Source of the DNA: Octopus bimaculoides
Taxonomy: Eukaryota
Length of the DNA stretch: 63,278 bases
NCBI RefSeq assembly: GCF_001194135.2
Contig: NC_069009.1
Span: 11,178,485-11,241,762, forward strand
Direction: 5' to 3'
Under the pieces are notes generated by a model. The model was given only the letters and a program-made list of their open reading frames with translations. It did no database searches and had not been told where the DNA came from. The position numbers and the translations under genes are program-made. Of this stretch, positions 3,517 through 62,939 are shown piece after piece; the first letter of the stretch is position 1; the number at the start of each line of letters is the position of its first letter.

Positions 3517-3691
3517 CTAACTTTGACATTCCGAGTATTCCATTATAGGTATTACTTTGCTTTGGTTATTGCTTGAATCTGTCTGACACCCGCCCTCGAC
3601 ACTTACTTTTCTGTTGAACATTGTGTTCGTATAATTTATAAAGGCTGGCAAGTGACATCCACAATTCATACCGTTATTGTTTCTGAGGTCA
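3517..3691 (-). CDS. LRR C-terminal cap (LRRCT) exon, probable terminal coding exon
   Basis: Acceptor ataatttcAG, then 1 nt + DLRNNNGMNCGCHLPAFINYTNTMFNRKVSVEGGCQTDSSNNQSKVIPIMEYSECQS-stop. It carries a last xLxxN strand, CxC and two more Cys, and its phase fits the LRR exons (junction at|t = Ile). Confidence 0.8.
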
Positions 3692-4778
3692 CTGAAATTA
3701 TAAACAGAACAGTGTATGTACTTTAGAGGTGTAGAGAAACCCCTGCTGTATTTGACAAGAAACAAGGATAATATAATTCTCTCAAGATTATAGAAACAAT
3801 GACATTCATGTTTTCTTCCCAGAGTTGTTAATGACAACAACAAAGGGAAATGATTTCTAGTTAAAACCGAAAATATGTTAAGTTCCTCCTCTCTTGTAAC
3901 TTATGTATTGAATAATAAAGTTACTTTAAATAAGCCACGTAAGCCGATTCTTTTATAGCATGCATTAGGGACGCTTTAGTGCCAAGAATAAGGTGGTGGC
4001 GATTTGCTGCCACTGTTGTTGAGCAAAACTGTTGTAGACGGGATATTTTGTCGCTAAGGATTTTTATTTTTCAGCCAACATAACATCGGGTCTTAAAGTT
4101 AGATACAAATCAATGCAGAAGCTGAAAAGTACAGAGTTTATTCGTTATACAAATCATCATAGTTATTGATTGGGGAAATGAATTAAGATATATAATTCGA
4201 AATATTAAGTAATATTTTCATTCTTTTAGTACTAATAATGATAATAACACCTATTTGACAACAATGTGGCTCTCCCGAAGGGGACAATGTTACTGTTGGT
4301 TTAGCCACAAGAAACATTGTTTCTAGCAGGCTATACGACACACTATCTGTGTCCTTATATTTTCGAACAGGGAGCCTAGCACTTCATCTAGCGCAGAACA
4401 TGATGGGGTACTGGGTTATTATTATGAAGGAATATCAATTTCTCAAATATCAGGGAATTAATTAAATCAACGTAGAATGCAGATAGAGTATCTACTTTAG
4501 ATGATATAGCTTGGAAATTCGAAAATTTAAAAGAGTTGACATATAGAGGATATAGAGGACATATGAAATATAGATGACATAAGGTATATATATATATATA
4601 TATATATATATATATATGTGTGTGTGTGTGTGTGTGTGTGTGTGTGTGTGTGTGTGTTAAATAATGAGGGTATATATTAATATTAATCAATTAATATCAA
4701 TGTTGATGATATACTATATTTATACTTAATAAATAAATTCTAGATGTTTAAATGGCTATTGTAAAACGTTAAGAACTA

Positions 4779-5251
4779 TACCTTATCCTCAACTTACGAC
4801 CATCCGCACTTACGACCACGGACAAAATAAGCGTATCATTCAAGTTGCTGTCCGTTGTTATCGTAAGATATATGAGAAAAAAAAATTATTTAAATCTCAC
4901 TACGTTCCTCGAAAAGCTATCTACTTCAACCCAAAAACAAGACTGCGAAGAATAAAAATTTATTTTCAATTGCACTTTTTTCACAAGAACAATTTTTATT
5001 GTATGTGTGCAGAATTTCTTTTGTATTATTTTTACATTTACTTTACATTGTAATTTTGTTTACCACACAAATGAGTACATATGTATTTTTAACTTTATGC
5101 ACAATAATTATGTATTAACTTTTTGTGTTTTATATTCTTATAGCTCGTTCGAATAAAAATGGCGTTTATAAATATAAATCCGACATACGACCAAATCGAC
5201 TTACCACCTGTCAGTTGGAACGGAACTCGGTCGTAGGTCGAGGAGAAGATG
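4779..5251. mobile_element. MITE, Tigger/pogo-like, with TA flanks
   Basis: Left cttatcctcaacttacgacc versus right reverse complement cttctcctcgacctacgacc; TA at 4777-4778 and 5252-5253; no ORF. Confidence 0.7.
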
Positions 5252-6921
5252 TAATTATATGTTATTCACCTGATATTTTTCAGCGATTCTTAACTTAGGT
5301 TAAAAGTAACATTATTTTTTCACTCGTTTCATTGCATTTGCTGAGAAAAACTAAATCATTCACTAATAGCTGCTCATACTGCTACTAGAGACAACCAAAA
5401 GGATAAACAAACCTAGATTCAGAAGTGGCTTTCATCTTTCATAGCTATTGACTGTCAAATGACACATCTACTGCATTAAACATTTGACATGACTTTCGCG
5501 AGCGTAAATAATTCATGTTTTACAGTGAATCGTTTCACAAACGATTCAAATTTGTTATAAACTCCAAACAGTTTCAGAGTAACGTATATTTTTCGACACT
5601 TTTGATCACACTTGGAAGATGGTACGAAGGAATGAATCATTCCCTAAAGCTACACCAAGCTGTCACCACGACTTAGATTAATTTGATAATAGCTGCATTC
5701 TCTCACAGCTGCTTGACACAAACAACAGACTAACAAAACAGCCCATTCACTTATTGTTCTGTCACATGACAAATCTACAGGACTAAACCTTTGACGTGAC
5801 TTTGCGCATGAATATCACAAGATTTTAATACGTGGCCGTAACAGATATCAGATCAAAGGTACTTTTATTACACAACGTGACCATCCTCAACCAATCAAAC
5901 TATATTTTTATTGATAGCGATCTGAGAACATTCTTTCTATAAAAACAAACGATGTTTAGGTACATTTTGCGACACAACTCCACGTTTTTCATAAGGTACT
6001 CTTTTGAAAATCAACAAATGTATATACTTATAAATCGATATATATCGAAATGTATATACATATAAAACTTCATATGAGAATACGACTGTGAAGGCGTTGG
6101 TTCTACGTAAGTGAAATTACATTTGTGACGTACAAGTTGAACGCTCTAACGTTTTACATAACGTTTTATTTCTTGTGTCAATTTCTGTCTCTTCTCTTTT
6201 TCTTTGTCTCTCTGTTTCCAGCCTTCCCTCTTTCTTTCTCTCTTTACACTTCTAGCACATTACTCTGTTTGCTTCTTGTCTCTCTACCTGCCACCACTCA
6301 TTCTCTCTCCTCCCACTACCACATAACCCATGACCATTCGTATCTCTCATCCATTTCCTTTTTCGCCAAACCATTAACTCGGTCAGTCACGTCTCTCTCT
6401 GATCCAACCCTTTTTCGATACGGTTTATTTTCTTTCCCTTTCTTTCGGGCTTTCTGTCTGTCCATTCTTTGTTTCCAGTCCTACGGTACATTTTCATTTT
6501 CCTTTGTGTTACCTCAATCTAGACCATCTTGCGGCCGTACAGCAATTTTCCCTTGTAAATGTATAATTGAAAAAAAAGAAAAGGGCCCTTTTCTTTTCTT
6601 AAACCTAACACAACTCTCAATTTCAAGCATCCTTATTTTTCCAACTATTATCTACATGGATTACCGTTGAACTTTAAAACCTCAAAGACAAGATAATGTA
6701 TTGGTATATTTATTTTTTATATATTATTTTTTTTGGATATTTTTTACTCTTTTGTAAAAAACATTTTCATTCTCACTCTTCTTGAAAATTTGCCATGCAA
6801 TGAAAGACGGTTAGAAATCTATATTAAAATATGCTGTCAGTTTAGCATTCTGTCTTATTATTATTTTTCATTTTCCTATATATATATATATAAGCATGGA
6901 GGCATTAGGGTGGTATTTGTA

Positions 6922-61050: not shown

Positions 61051-62048
61051 CTGTCAAATAAAATAGAATTTGTAAGGAACTGCTTGTAGAAAAAAACAAA
61101 GAAAAAGAAATCAGGAAGTTGTGATGTGAAAGAAATTATAAACATACGGACTGAAAAGTGTTTAAAATTTGGAAATATGGTGAGGTAAGGGGAAGAGAAT
61201 AAAAAGAAGACGGAAAAGAGGTAGAAAGAGAAGGTTGTGGTGGAGTAGAAAGAGAACAAAGAGAAGAAGGAAAAGAAAAAAAACAGAGCGAAGGACAAAT
61301 ACGACAAAAGCAACAATAAGCAAAATGTTAAGAGGTTGCGGAGTAACGAGAATGCGAAAGATAATAGCAAATGCAGTACGATGAAATGTAAAAGAAGGTA
61401 AAAAAGAGGAAAAGGCAATGAGGAAAGAAGGGAGCACAAGATGGGGGTAATAAAACAATTAAATCTGTAGAAGAATTAAATGAAGAGAGAGAAGAATGAA
61501 AGAAGGAAAAGAAGGAAAATAAAAGAAAGAAAATCAAGGGGAGCAACAGAAGAAGAAAAGGAAGAAGAAGAAGAAGAAGAAGAAGAAGAAGAAGAAGAAG
61601 AAGAAGAAGAAGAAGAAGAAGAAGAAGAAGAAGAAGAAGAATGAAGGGGAGAAGAAGGAGGAGAAGAAGCAGGAGGAGAAGAAGGAGGATGAGAAGAAGG
61701 AGGAAGAGGAGAAGAAGGAGGAAAAGTAGACGAAGAAAGAGAAGAAGACGAAGAAGGAGGAGGAGGTGAAGAATGAGGAGGAGAAAAGGCTAAAGGAGGA
61801 GAAGAACAACAACAACAGCAACGATAAGAACCACATTAAGTAGAAGAATTCGGAGGAAAGTTTTGGATGGTAATCAGTGCTGAGGGAGACATAAGCAGCC
61901 TACATGATATACAGACGGAATTGCACATATATTTTGGTACATTACCTTGCATATATCCTTATATAAAGTGACATATATGTATATATGTGTATATATATAT
62001 AGATATATATATATATATATATATGTATGTATGTATGTATGTATGTAT

Positions 62049-62112
62049 AGATAGATAGATAGATAGATAGATAGATAGATAGATAGATAGATAGATAGAT
62101 AGATAGATAGAT
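62049..62112. repeat. (GATA)n microsatellite within a TA/TATG compound tract
   Basis: Read directly. Confidence 0.95.
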
Positions 62113-62867
62113 ATGTGTGTGTGGGTGTATATATATATATATATATANNNNNNNNNNNNNNNNNNNNNNNNNNNNNNNNNNNNNNNNNNNNNNNNNNNNN
62201 NNNNNNNNNNNNNNNNNNNNNNNNNNNNNNNNNNNNNNNNNNNNNNNNNNNNNNNNNNNNNNNNNNNNNNNNNNNNNNNNNNNNNNNNNNNNNNNNNNNN
62301 NNNNNNNNNNNNNNNNNNNNNNNNNNNNNNNNNNNNNNNNNNNNNNNNNNNNNNNNNNNNNNNNNNNNNNNNNNNNNNNNNNNNNNNNNNNNNNNNNNNN
62401 NNNNNNNNNNNNNNNNNNNNNNNNNNNNNNNNNNNNNNNNNNNNNNNNNNNNNNNNNNNNNNNNNNNNNNNNNNNNNNNNNNNNNNNNNNATATATATAT
62501 ATATATATATATATATATACATGAACACGTTTACACTATTTTTTTACACTAACTGTCAAACACTCATATATTCCAAATACTAGGAATTGGCCCTCACTTA
62601 CATTCACAGACATTAACAAGCATACAAACTTTGAACAGAGGCTGATTTTACACATATACAGAAACATGTACATCCCCTGAACGATGGTGCTCTCATATTT
62701 CCCATAACTAAAAAATGGGCTGTCACTCACAAACGCAGATTAATAAAAGGTAAAACACATCTCTGGAAAGACCGGGGGGGGGAGCTTCAAGTGAAGGATG
62801 GAAAGATCTAACAGATTTAGAAATATATCGTTAATGAAATACAATAAAAACGATTGAATCAACTTAC

Positions 62868-62939
62868 AGTTCTTTTAGATTGGACAAATTTCGGAAGCTG
62901 CCTGCTGCGATTTCTTTGATATCATTATATGTCAAGTAT
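62868..62939 (-). CDS. LRR exon 1 (most 5' in the window): YLTYNDIKEIAAGSFRNLSNLKE
   Basis: gttgcAG, 72 nt, GTaagt; open. The intron module continues to the window edge, so the array probably extends further. Confidence 0.93.

What the first reader, a model, noticed from the sequence alone, without database searches (positions are those of the whole stretch)
3517..62939. Hidden array of 22 intact, interchangeable 72-nt LRR exons plus an LRRCT cap: candidate combinatorial LRR receptor locus
Seen: 22 minus-strand exons of exactly 72 nt, all AG/GT-bounded, all phase 2-2 and none with a stop or frameshift, although most surrounding transposase and RT coding sequence is decayed. Every junction codon is CTN, TTN or ATN, so any subset can splice in frame, and the series ends in a four-Cys LRRCT exon. 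Established: one-LRR-per-exon with phase-2 introns is the normal layout of glycoprotein-hormone-receptor/LGR-type genes, so the exon format alone is not new. Diversified LRR receptors exist in jawless fish (VLRs, cassette assembly), and exon-array splicing diversity exists in arthropod Dscam. Inference: the recent amplification of whole exon+intron cassettes, their near-identical scaffold and their variable binding face make this a candidate diversified recognition molecule (immune or neuronal) in a probable cephalopod, diversified by exon skipping and/or cassette copy-number change.
Basis: partly seen in the sequence, partly recalled or inferred. Interest (0 to 1): 0.92.

Follow-up and report, generated by a model that had tools for sequence, protein, structure and literature searches.

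The report
Octopus LRR receptor exon array
The window holds the ligand-binding part of an octopus-type cell-surface receptor gene, built from 22 interchangeable one-repeat exons. The family is already known, but relatives in public annotations mix and match such exons, which deserves a long-read RNA test.

Summary
There are 22 minus-strand exons of exactly 72 nt. All are AG/GT-bounded, phase 2-2 and intact, and a four-Cys cap exon follows them. An HMM of the exons finds these 22 and no decayed copies.

It is not an unknown locus. The closest proteins come only from Octopus bimaculoides, O. sinensis and O. vulgaris. They belong to a tandemly expanded family with the layout LRR, LRRCT-like cap, Cys-rich module, HRM-like module and GAIN/GPS. 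This is probably the published octopus-specific adhesion-GPCR expansion.

- **Cap exon:** it is internal. Its in-frame TAG lies inside the 5' splice site that the O. bimaculoides relative uses.
- **Age:** the cassettes are only 66-84% identical (dS about 0.4), so the amplification is not recent.
- **Selection:** concave-face codons give dN/dS of about 2.6, scaffold codons 0.06.
- **Exon count:** it depends on the assembly. A cap-adjacent type of LRR exon sits mid-array beside a 100-N gap, so two tandem genes (13 + 9 exons) are possible.
- **Exon skipping:** support is indirect. Annotated isoforms of relatives in O. sinensis and O. vulgaris differ by whole 24-aa units.
- **VLR-like assembly or an immune role:** nothing supports either.

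The parts
62868..62939 (-). LRR exon 1 (YLTYNDIKEIAAGSFRNLSNLKE). The gene continues 5' beyond the window.
   Evidence: AG/GT bounded, 72 nt, phase 2-2, nhmmer E 1.2e-15
60979..61050 (-). LRR exon 2
53252..53323 (-). LRR exon 3
52569..52640 (-). LRR exon 4
50910..50981 (-). LRR exon 5
46149..46220 (-). LRR exon 6. It is the first of eight exons (6-13) in one gap-free stretch, 28386-47516.
43540..43611 (-). LRR exon 7. Its cassette is 78% identical to that of exon 8.
41246..41317 (-). LRR exon 8
36676..36747 (-). LRR exon 9
34058..34129 (-). LRR exon 10. It forms a cassette pair with exon 11.
32875..32946 (-). LRR exon 11
32515..32586 (-). LRR exon 12
28857..28928 (-). LRR exon 13, of the cap-adjacent type (SLRNNRIQNFEDGVFLFLPSINY; it ends in AT and has the donor gtatgtacaaca). 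In almost every relative read here this type lies directly before the cap exon. It may mark the 3' LRR end of a separate upstream gene.
   Evidence: its cassette is closer to L001 o19 (77.9%) than to window exon 22 (75.5%)
28286..28385 (.). 100-N assembly gap in intron 13. Homology to the cap-adjacent cassette (9218-9639 ~ 28389-28818) stops exactly here. Continuity is untestable, so this is a possible hidden gene boundary or a deletion/fusion point.
26738..26809 (-). LRR exon 14
25025..25096 (-). LRR exon 15. It belongs to the locus-specific amplified group 15-20 (79-84% identical cassettes).
23966..24037 (-). LRR exon 16
21359..21430 (-). LRR exon 17
19199..19270 (-). LRR exon 18
17699..17770 (-). 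LRR exon 19 (ends in TT)
16030..16101 (-). LRR exon 20
14834..14905 (-). LRR exon 21 (YLHDNKITYIQRSIFENLPNLEI). Its counterparts in O. bimaculoides are at L001 37300 and 25279.
9776..9847 (-). LRR exon 22, of the cap-adjacent type (NLRNNRIQNYEDGAFLYLPSITH)
   Evidence: 80.6% identical to the L001 cassette at 42809
3522..3691 (-). Four-Cys LRRCT-like cap exon. It is internal, not terminal. The donor is CAAA|GTTAGT (phase 1), and the in-frame TAG at 3519-3517 lies inside that 5' splice site.
   Evidence: 69% identical to the P0001 cap; the O. bimaculoides locus has the same donor sequence and splices on to the exon encoding NYSLFQ...
17641..17670 (-). Best copy of a conserved intronic element (ATTTCATTGACGATATNTTTCTAAATCTGT), about 28-57 nt downstream of an LRR exon. 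The other copies are at 15975, 21301, 23908, 24967, 26683, 46092, 60922 and 62811.
   Evidence: 9 hits with up to 3 mismatches (0 expected) in the window and 7 in O. bimaculoides L001; intron positions +21..+50 are as conserved as the exons

Best explanation
**What it is.** The window carries the middle of a gene, or of two tandem genes, from an Octopus-restricted, tandemly expanded family of cell-surface receptors. In relatives the domain order is signal peptide/LRRNT, LRR array, LRRCT-like cap, Cys-rich module, HRM-like module, GAIN/GPS and, inferred, a class-B 7TM. That makes it an LRR-bearing adhesion-GPCR-like receptor.

**How the array is built.** Each 24-residue LRR turn is encoded by its own 72-nt, phase 2-2 exon.
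- Shown: the array grew by tandem duplication of whole exon+intron cassettes. Some duplications are shared with the O. bimaculoides locus, and some (exons 15-20, 7/8, 10/11) are specific to this locus.
- Shown: after duplication, the scaffold codons (L, N, I, F) stayed under strong purifying selection while the concave-face codons diverged quickly. The array therefore encodes a long solenoid whose binding surface differs from turn to turn.

**How it may vary.** Every exon is symmetrical and every junction codon stays hydrophobic, so skipping any exon leaves a valid solenoid that is one turn shorter.
- Shown only for relatives: annotated transcripts of family members in two Octopus species differ by whole 24-aa units.
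- Inferred for this locus: regulated cassette skipping tunes the length and composition of the ectodomain. A conserved intronic element just downstream of many exons may take part in that regulation.

**Likely function.** Inferred from the family: cell-cell or ligand recognition in neural, sucker or skin tissue, with signalling through GAIN/7TM exons that lie outside this window.
For: - **Exon array:**
- **LRR identity:** LRR_8 at 2.4e-146. The best solved matches are IGFALS, LRRC15, LGR4/5 and TLR3/13, and the cap start aligns to solved LRRCT caps.
- **Family:** the best hits (49-69% identity) are Octopus-only. Relatives continue past the cap into Cys-rich and HRM-like modules. P0124 overlaps P0169/P0170, which carry GPS and GAIN. 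An O. sinensis neighbour has LRR_8 + GPS + 7tm_2.
- **Same exon layout elsewhere:** 24 exon-HMM hits in the O. bimaculoides locus L001, 22 of them canonical 72-nt AG/GT exons, at least 20 of which precede its cap exon. The O. sinensis locus L002 has 12.
- **Relation to L001:** the 3' part of the window is collinear with L001 at 70-83% nucleotide identity.
- **The cap exon is internal:**
- **Cassette duplication and age:**
- **Selection:** dN/dS is 2.58 for face codons and 0.06 for scaffold codons in exons 14-20. Amino-acid entropy peaks at positions 2, 4, 5, 7 and 24.
- **Isoforms differing by whole LRR units:**. Eight of the 13 O. sinensis isoforms are explained by canonical skipping of mapped exons, and two intact exons are used by none.
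- **Conserved downstream intronic element:**
- **Literature:** an octopus-specific adhesion-GPCR expansion, some members with LRRs, expressed in axial nerve cord, suckers and skin (PMC6408891).
Against: - The GAIN/GPS/7TM exons, the LRRNT exon and the Cys-rich exon are not in the window. Membership of the adhesion-GPCR family therefore rests on relatives.
- The relatives' gene models are fragmentary. None of the retrieved protein models links an LRR array to a 7TM in one chain. The only such model is the O. sinensis neighbour known from its Pfam listing, which lies on the opposite strand to P0003.
- The link to 'group 3' of PMC6408891 is my inference. No sequence was matched to that paper's set.
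- There is no transcript evidence for this locus.
- Five of the 13 O. sinensis isoforms use hybrid half-exons. That looks like a mapping or template-switching artefact, so the isoform catalogue is partly unreliable.
- The dN/dS estimate rests on 6 codons in 7 exons and on non-independent pairs.
- Exon 13 is of the cap-adjacent type and sits beside an unbridged gap, so the 22 exons may not belong to one transcript.
Confidence: 0.75

Rival explanations
1. There are two tandem family members, or a scaffolding join, rather than one 22-exon gene. Gene A contributes exons 1-13 and ends its LRR array with the cap-adjacent exon at 28857. Its cap exon, its downstream exons and the 5' exon of gene B are hidden in, or were lost at, the 100-N gap at 28286-28385. 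Gene B contributes exons 14-22 plus the cap exon.
For: - In almost every relative read here, the '..YEDGAFLFLPSI..' LRR lies directly before the cap exon.
- Exon 13 keeps that type's special AT ending and its donor gtatgtacaaca.
- Its cassette is older than the split between window exon 22 and L001 (77.9% to o19 against 75.5% to w22; w22 to o19 is 80.6%).
- Homology to the cap-adjacent cassette ends exactly at the gap.
- Family genes lie in tandem. In L001 a new LRR array starts just after a 100-N gap that follows the C-terminal exons.
Against: - No LRRNT, cap or Cys-rich exon is visible between 26810 and 28856.
- The sequence on the far side of the gap looks like ordinary array intron.
- Exon 13 can splice in frame to exon 14, giving a Met junction.
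- A deletion that fused two arrays would give the same picture, but as a single gene.
- The O. bimaculoides array has at least 20 LRR exons before its cap, so 22 is not implausible.
Confidence: 0.35
2. It is a combinatorial diversity generator in the strict sense, like Dscam or clustered protocadherins. Individual cells would express different LRR exon subsets to give cell-surface identity or a broad recognition repertoire.
For: - All exons are symmetrical and interchangeable.
- Relatives have many annotated isoforms that differ by whole units.
- The flanking intron is as conserved as the exon, as is common for regulated cassette exons.
- The concave-face codons are diversifying.
- The family is reported to be expressed in nerve cord and suckers (PMC6408891).
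Against: - There are no RNA data for this locus and no per-cell data anywhere.
- The annotated variation in L002 is confined to the first few exons, while f, g and h are constitutive.
- Several isoforms look artefactual.
- No docking/selector-type RNA pairing was found. The RNAalifold consensus energy is -0.04 kcal/mol with no covariation.
- The number of included exons varies, so the exons are not mutually exclusive.
Confidence: 0.25
3. It is an LGR-type (rhodopsin-class) hormone receptor, a Slit-like guidance protein or a Toll-like receptor, as the exon format and the database names of relatives suggest.
For:
- The best solved matches include LGR4/5 and TLR3/13.
- Relatives are named 'toll-like receptor 5', 'slit homolog' or 'LRRC15-like'.
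Against: - Those names come from LRR similarity alone.
- Beyond the cap, relatives carry Cys-rich, HRM-like and GAIN/GPS modules. They have no TIR, EGF/laminin-G or 7tm_1 domain. The neighbouring full model has 7tm_2.
- The non-LRR part finds only Octopus proteins.
Confidence: 0.04
4. It is a dead or non-functional exon array, a pseudogene relic, or donor cassettes for VLR-like somatic assembly.
For: - No 5' or 3' gene ends lie in the window.
- No annotated protein in the database matches this locus closely.
- The region is full of transposon debris and gaps.
Against: - All 22 copies are intact and keep canonical AG/GT sites, polypyrimidine tracts and CTAAC-like branch sites, with no decayed copy.
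- Scaffold codons have dN/dS 0.06 at dS of about 0.4-0.5, which requires long-term purifying selection.
- VLR donor cassettes are not spliceable exons in a single transcription unit (my own knowledge). Here all exons share one strand and one phase.
Confidence: 0.03

Closest known systems
Octopus-specific adhesion-GPCR expansion ('group 3' of Ritschard et al. 2019, PMC6408891), probably represented by RefSeq/ENA models in O. bimaculoides, O. sinensis and O. vulgaris named 'adhesion GPCR G6-like', 'slit homolog-like', 'LRRC15-like' or 'toll-like receptor 5'
   Same: - LRR type and the LRRCT-like cap (60-69% identical).
- The cap-adjacent '..YEDGAFLFLPSI..' repeat.
- One LRR per 72-nt phase-2 exon.
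- The same cap-exon donor.
- Tandem genomic organisation and restriction to Octopus.
   Different: - This locus matches no annotated protein closely (best 49-55% over the array).
- It has more LRR exons than any retrieved model, and it has its own amplified sub-array (exons 15-20).
- The paper does not describe the exon-array layout or LRR-unit isoforms.
- The equation of these protein models with the paper's group 3 is inferred, not tested.
LGR4/5/6 and glycoprotein-hormone receptors (LRR-containing rhodopsin-class GPCRs)
   Same: - A long 'typical' 24-residue LRR horseshoe with one LRR per roughly 72-nt phase-2 exon (my own knowledge).
- LGR4/5 are among the best solved-structure matches.
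   Different: - Relatives of this gene carry GAIN/GPS (class B2), not a hinge plus 7tm_1.
- The array is longer.
- The Cys-rich and HRM-like modules are absent from LGRs.
ADGRA2/ADGRA3 (GPR124/GPR125), vertebrate LRR-bearing adhesion GPCRs
   Same: An N-terminal LRR block with an LRRCT cap, followed by an HRM-like module and GAIN/GPS (vertebrate architecture from my own knowledge; octopus relatives).
   Different: - The vertebrate proteins have about 4 LRRs and an Ig domain.
- The octopus family has 3 to more than 20 LRRs, no Ig domain, and extra Cys-rich and repeated modules.
- No orthology is shown.
Dscam1 (arthropods) and clustered protocadherins (vertebrates, octopus)
   Same: Arrays of duplicated, interchangeable exons in a cell-surface recognition gene. 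Annotated isoform multiplicity exists in relatives.
   Different: - Dscam uses one-of-N mutually exclusive choice with docking/selector RNA pairing. Here the number of included exons varies and no such pairing was found.
- Protocadherins use alternative promoters and first exons.
Variable lymphocyte receptors of jawless fish
   Same: LRR modules with a conserved scaffold and a variable concave face, ending in an LRRCT. The cap start aligns to a VLR LRRCT.
   Different: VLR diversity arises by somatic gene-conversion-like assembly from non-spliceable donor cassettes (my own knowledge). Here the units are ordinary spliceable exons in one transcription unit.

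Membership tests
Leucine-rich repeat ('typical', 24-residue) extracellular domain | Tandem LxxLxLxxNxIxxIxxxxFxxL repeats recognised by LRR profiles | tested here: met
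   LRR_8 at 2.4e-146 with 12 matched stretches. L3, N6, I8, F16, L19 and L22 are nearly invariant across the 22 exons.
LRRCT cap | A four-Cys C-x-C...C...C module directly after the last LRR, recognised by PF01463 or aligned to solved caps | tested here: inconclusive
   The Cys pattern is present. PF01463 is not detected even at E<=10. phmmer aligns 'NNNGMNCGCHLPAF' to 'GNPWDCGCPLKAL' of IGFALS (7wrq) and to the LRRCT of the LGR4-VLR chimera 4qxe.
Octopus LRR adhesion-GPCR-like family | Closest relatives share the cap exon, the cap-adjacent LRR type and the exon layout | tested here: met
   Cap identity is 60-69%, the donor is identical, the 3' flank is collinear with L001, and L001 and L002 have the same 72-nt exon arrays.
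Adhesion GPCR (class B2) | GAIN domain with a GPS motif | not testable with these tools
   Not in the window, since the gene runs off at position 1. In relatives, P0124 overlaps P0169/P0170, which carry GPS (9.7e-13 and 2.9e-12) and a sub-threshold GAIN match (8.3e-4).
Adhesion GPCR (class B2) | 7tm_2 seven-transmembrane domain in the same polypeptide | not testable with these tools
   Not in the window. The only evidence is an O. sinensis neighbour model of 1088 aa listed with LRR_8 + GPS + 7tm_2. The retrieved family models are truncated before the 7TM.
LGR / glycoprotein-hormone receptor | LRR ectodomain joined through a hinge to a rhodopsin-type 7tm_1 | tested here: not met
   Tested on relatives only. 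The modules after the cap are Cys-rich, HRM-like and GAIN/GPS, and the neighbour has 7tm_2. No family member has 7tm_1.
Dscam-type mutually exclusive exon cluster | Exactly one exon of the cluster per transcript, with docking/selector RNA pairing | tested here: not met
   Annotated isoforms of relatives include 5 to 8 exons of the array. RNAalifold on 19 downstream flanks gives -0.04 kcal/mol and no covarying pair. This was tested on relatives and on flanks only.
VLR-type somatic cassette assembly | An incomplete germline gene flanked by donor cassettes that lack splice signals, with somatic rearrangement | tested here: not met
   All 22 units are canonical AG/GT exons with polypyrimidine tracts, on one strand and in one phase. 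Somatic DNA cannot be examined here.
Combinatorial cassette-exon splicing of the LRR array | Transcripts of one gene that differ by whole LRR exons | tested here: inconclusive
   Seen for relatives in two annotations: O. sinensis at 409/385/361/337 aa and 525/501/477 aa, and O. vulgaris at 489/465/441 aa. Five O. sinensis models use hybrid half-exons and are doubtful. There are no transcript data for the window's locus.

The most novel reading that the evidence does not exclude
Octopuses may have an LRR-based isoform-diversity system. In a lineage-specific, tandemly expanded adhesion-GPCR family, arrays of up to 20 or more symmetrical one-LRR cassette exons would be spliced combinatorially. 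A conserved downstream intronic element may help regulate this. The result would be many receptor ectodomains per gene, used for neuronal or sucker cell-surface identity or for contact recognition. It would be a third solution alongside Dscam and clustered protocadherins.
Probability: 0.22. Interest if true: 0.85.

Novelty: new member of a known kind. Interest (0 to 1): 0.55.

Why it matters
Octopus nervous systems are known for lineage-specific expansions of cell-surface genes, namely protocadherins and some GPCR groups. This locus shows that one of those expansions builds its ligand-binding domain from long arrays of interchangeable exons. The binding-face codons of those exons diversify quickly.

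Public annotations of sister loci already contain isoform series that differ by whole repeats. If long-read RNA confirms this, the family would give octopuses a splicing-based way to vary a receptor's binding surface. No paper in the searchable library describes such a thing.

If long reads do not confirm it, the locus is still a useful correction. Relatives are misnamed 'TLR5', 'slit' or 'decorin-like', and their gene models are split or truncated.

Tried and rejected
- **First regex:** my first LRR regex, applied to the candidate exons, was too strict and found only a spurious hit. It was replaced by listing all open AG-72-GT windows and by an exon HMM.
- **Low-stringency tblastn:** a search for decayed exons at low stringency gave only noise.
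- **Downstream and upstream modules:** tblastn of the relatives' LRRNT, Cys-rich, SEA-like and HRM-like modules against the window found none. The gene ends are therefore outside the window or in gaps.
- **Pfam on the non-LRR part:** the post-cap region of P0001 gave nothing significant. Pfam LRRCT did not score on the cap exon.
- **Locus look-ups:** P0137 and P0138 are not on record, and the P0003 gene range is too long for DNA to be returned.
- **RNA structure:** the search for structure around the conserved intronic element was negative.
- **Bridging the 28286-28385 gap:** paralogous cassettes did not bridge it.
- **Literature:** searches for a description of LRR-exon splicing diversity in cephalopods found none.
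- **Species of origin:** not identified. The gap style resembles the O. bimaculoides assembly, but no annotated protein matches closely.

Full report
**1. The observation**

The window is 63,278 bases, AT-rich (GC about 0.35) and has 15 runs of N. I listed every minus-strand AG-72nt-GT window with an open frame. That list contains 22 exons whose frame-2 translation is a 'typical' LRR of the form xLxxNxIxxIxxxxFxxLxxLxx.

With their flanks, every exon has a pyrimidine tract plus CAG or TAG acceptor and a GTAAGT, GTGAGT or GTATGT donor. Every exon starts with one base and ends with two bases of a split codon. The exon ends are CT in 19 exons, TT in one and AT in two, so any pair of exons joins as Leu, Leu/Phe or Ile/Met.

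An HMM built from the 22 exons and run with nhmmer finds exactly these 22 (E 4e-8 to 6e-20). Everything else scores at E above 0.2. The sequenced part therefore holds no decayed copies and no plus-strand copies. The concatenated product scores LRR_8 at 2.4e-146.

**2. The assembly gaps**

No gap touches an exon. Gaps lie in introns 1, 2, 5, 13, 14, 16, 17 and 18, and 14 of the 22 introns are gap-free. Exons 6-13 lie in one uninterrupted stretch, as do exons 19-22 plus the cap exon. Each exon carries its own phase, so reading frame does not depend on continuity. Exon number and order do.

- Three gaps have exactly overlapping flanks: 147 nt at 57144-57917, 37 nt at 23408-23417, and 75 nt of (GAA)n at 20079-20088. 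Little or nothing is missing there.
- Most other gaps sit in (GAA)n, (TA)n, (CA)n or (AGT)n runs.
- Paralogous cassettes align across the two 10-N gaps at 18548 and 20079, implying roughly -100 to +100 nt missing.
- The gaps at 22539-22889, 28286-28385 and 55719-56231 have unique flanks and unknown content.

**3. What the gene is**

The spliced model finds, as its best hits (49-55% identity), only Octopus proteins with misleading names. Examples are 'toll-like receptor 5' (O. bimaculoides, P0001), 'LRRC15-like', 'SLIT and NTRK-like' and 'slit homolog'.

These relatives continue after a cap that is 60-69% identical to the window's four-Cys exon. The continuation has three parts:
- a Cys-rich module (NYSLFQRNLQCQTC...CCxGxLCN);
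- a module starting WTxSFxF;
- an HRM-like module (F/YxWPMTKxG...C).

Searching with that non-LRR part returns only proteins from O. bimaculoides, O. sinensis and O. vulgaris. Many are called 'adhesion GPCR G6-like'. Searching with the next segment reaches models that carry GPS and GAIN. Next to one relative in O. sinensis lies a 1088-aa model listed with LRR_8 + GPS + 7tm_2.

Ritschard et al. 2019 (PMC6408891) reported an octopus-specific expansion of adhesion GPCRs. Some members have LRRs, the genes are co-localised, and they are expressed in axial nerve cord, suckers and skin. The window's gene probably belongs to that expansion, but I did not match sequences to the paper's set. The GAIN/GPS/7TM part lies outside the window, so membership of the adhesion-GPCR class is inferred from relatives.

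**4. The cap exon is not the end**

In the O. bimaculoides locus (L001) the cap exon ends with the same bases...TGTCAAAGTTAGTAAA. The annotated product continues 'CQ|NYSLFQ', encoded 1.15 kb downstream. The donor is therefore CAAA|GTTAGT (phase 1), and the TAG is part of the 5' splice site.

No downstream exon is found in window 1-3521, so the gene runs off the window at both ends. Pfam LRRCT does not score on the cap. Its start does align to the solved LRRCT caps of IGFALS and of a VLR chimera. I therefore call it LRRCT-like.

**5. The same layout elsewhere**

- **L001 (O. bimaculoides).** The exon HMM gives 24 hits, 22 of them canonical 72-nt AG/GT exons. Of the other two, one has lost its donor and one is a 69-nt exon used in P0001. 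At least 20 canonical exons precede the cap, and two RefSeq models split them. A new array starts after the C-terminal exons.
- **L002 (O. sinensis).** It has an LRRNT exon, 12 LRR exons and the cap exon.
- **Relation to the window.** The 3' end of the window (12419-3433) is collinear with L001 41467-45556 at 70-83% nucleotide identity. Upstream, the arrays are not one-to-one.

**6. Age and mode of amplification**

Self-comparison shows that whole exon+intron cassettes are duplicated, but at only 66-84% identity. Some cassettes have their best partner in L001 (w1, w2, w13, w21, w22). Others have it inside the window (w15-w20, w7/w8, w10/w11), so part of the amplification is specific to this locus.

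Among exons 14-20, dS is about 0.43. The amplification is real but not recent.

**7. Selection**

Amino-acid entropy across the 22 repeats is close to zero at L3, N6, I8, F16, L19 and L22. It is highest at positions 2, 4, 5, 7 and 24, which are the x positions of the beta-strand face.

| Exon set | Face codons, dN/dS | Scaffold codons, dN/dS |
|---|---|---|
| Exons 14-20 | 2.58 | 0.06 |
| Exons 1-12 | 1.54 | 0.04 |

These are pooled Nei-Gojobori estimates. The face estimate rests on few codons and on non-independent pairs, so it is suggestive only. The scaffold value shows long-term constraint and argues against a dead array. By contrast, the transposon coding sequence in the introns is broken across frames.

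**8. Exon skipping**

The window gives no transcript evidence. Relatives give indirect evidence.

- **O. sinensis, gene on L002.** RefSeq lists 13 isoforms of 409, 385, 361 and 337 aa. They are identical except for which 24-aa units they contain. Mapped on the genome, eight isoforms follow from canonical skipping of exons a, b, j, c and e. Exons f, g and h are in all 13 isoforms and d is in 12. Two intact exons before the cap are used by no isoform. Five isoforms join the first half of one exon, whose own donor is broken, to the second half of another. I regard these as doubtful.
- **O. sinensis, second gene.** Isoforms are 525, 501 and 477 aa.
- **O. vulgaris.** In an independent annotation, one gene has forms of 489, 465 and 441 aa that differ by whole units.

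In addition, the 50 nt of intron downstream of the exons are as conserved among cassettes as the exons themselves: 0.63-0.68 against 0.57-0.71 identity, compared with 0.28-0.48 deeper in the intron. A 30-nt element, ATTTCATTGACGATATNTTTCTAAATCTGT, recurs 9 times in the window and 7 times in L001, always about 28 nt after an LRR exon, where 0 hits are expected by chance. It forms no conserved RNA structure. Conserved flanks are common around regulated cassette exons, which fits regulated splicing but does not prove it.

**9. One gene or two**

Exon 13 (28857-28928) is of the '..NRIQNxEDGxFLxLPSI..' type. In almost every relative read here, that type lies directly before the cap. The exon keeps that type's AT ending and its donor.

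Its cassette is older than the split between window exon 22 and its L001 counterpart. Homology to the cap-adjacent cassette stops exactly at the 100-N gap at 28286-28385.

Two readings fit. The scaffold may hide the rest of an upstream gene in that gap. Alternatively, an old deletion fused two arrays. I put the two-gene reading at about 0.35.

**10. Comparison and verdict**

The exon format is that of LGR and Slit genes (my own knowledge). The domain context of relatives excludes LGR, Slit and TLR. The units are ordinary exons, not VLR-type donor cassettes. Annotated isoforms of relatives vary the number of included exons, which is unlike Dscam's one-of-N choice.

The locus is a new and unusually long member of a known octopus-restricted receptor family. 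The ideas of recent amplification, a terminal cap and an immune, VLR-like role are not supported.

No paper in the searchable library describes LRR-exon isoform diversity in cephalopods.

Noticed in passing
window 15975-16004, 17641-17670, 21301-21330, 23908-23937, 24967-24996, 26683-26712, 46092-46121, 60922-60951, 62811-62840 (minus strand); L001 4460, 9842, 12547, 18261, 22221, 24669, 30900: A 30-nt intronic element (ATTTCATTGACGATATNTTTCTAAATCTGT) recurs about 28 nt downstream of many LRR exons in two loci. It is at least as conserved as the exons. It shows no conserved RNA structure and may be a splicing regulator.
   Followed up: partly
window 28857-28928 and gap 28286-28385: A cap-adjacent type of LRR exon sits in the middle of the array. 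Its homology block ends exactly at a 100-N gap with unique flanks. This may be a hidden gene boundary or an ancient fusion of two arrays.
   Followed up: partly
window 57144-57917, 23408-23417, 20079-20088: The flanks of these assembly gaps overlap each other exactly (147, 37 and 75 nt). The gaps look like scaffolding or gap-filling artefacts rather than missing sequence.
   Followed up: yes
window 1278-1682 and 2149-2545: A 405-nt inverted repeat at 95.8% identity starts right after a 10-N gap. Each arm holds the same open frame of about 90-117 aa (NIISVNKFFVLF...). It may be a foldback-type element or an assembly artefact.
   Followed up: no
window about 14000-62000: The plus strand is strongly purine-rich (GC skew up to +0.64, AT skew up to +0.64) with long (GAA)n and related runs, so the transcribed minus strand is pyrimidine-rich throughout the introns. 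The skew drops inside transposon insertions and below about 14 kb.
   Followed up: no
window 7194-8086 (+), 10400-12500 (-), 29400-32400 (+), 39153-39724 (+), 44000-46100, 59411-59918 (+), 22918-23367 (-): Broken transposon coding sequence lies in the introns. Pfam confirmed a mariner-type transposase at 7194-8086, LTR-retrotransposon RNase H and integrase pieces. By eye only: further mariner-like pieces at 10400-12500 and 29400-32400, a GC-rich block that looks like reverse transcriptase, and a possible GIY-YIG (Penelope-like) frame.
   Followed up: partly
window 337-765 (-): A 143-aa open frame with a Cys-rich motif (ECIHCKSKK...CSCGGKV) recalls the N-terminal region of Helitron-type proteins. 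It had no Pfam hit.
   Followed up: no
L002 11131-11202 and O. sinensis isoforms X2, X4, X7, X8, X13: Five RefSeq isoforms join the first half of an LRR exon that has lost its donor to the second half of other LRR exons at homologous positions. This could be read mis-mapping, template switching, or a haplotype with hybrid exons made by unequal crossing-over.
   Followed up: partly
L001 1-12518 and 72393-78433: The O. bimaculoides RefSeq models appear to split one continuous LRR exon array between two genes. The 805-aa model ends in LRR exons directly upstream of the first LRR exon of P0001. A further array begins right after the last exons of P0001 and a 100-N gap.
   Followed up: partly
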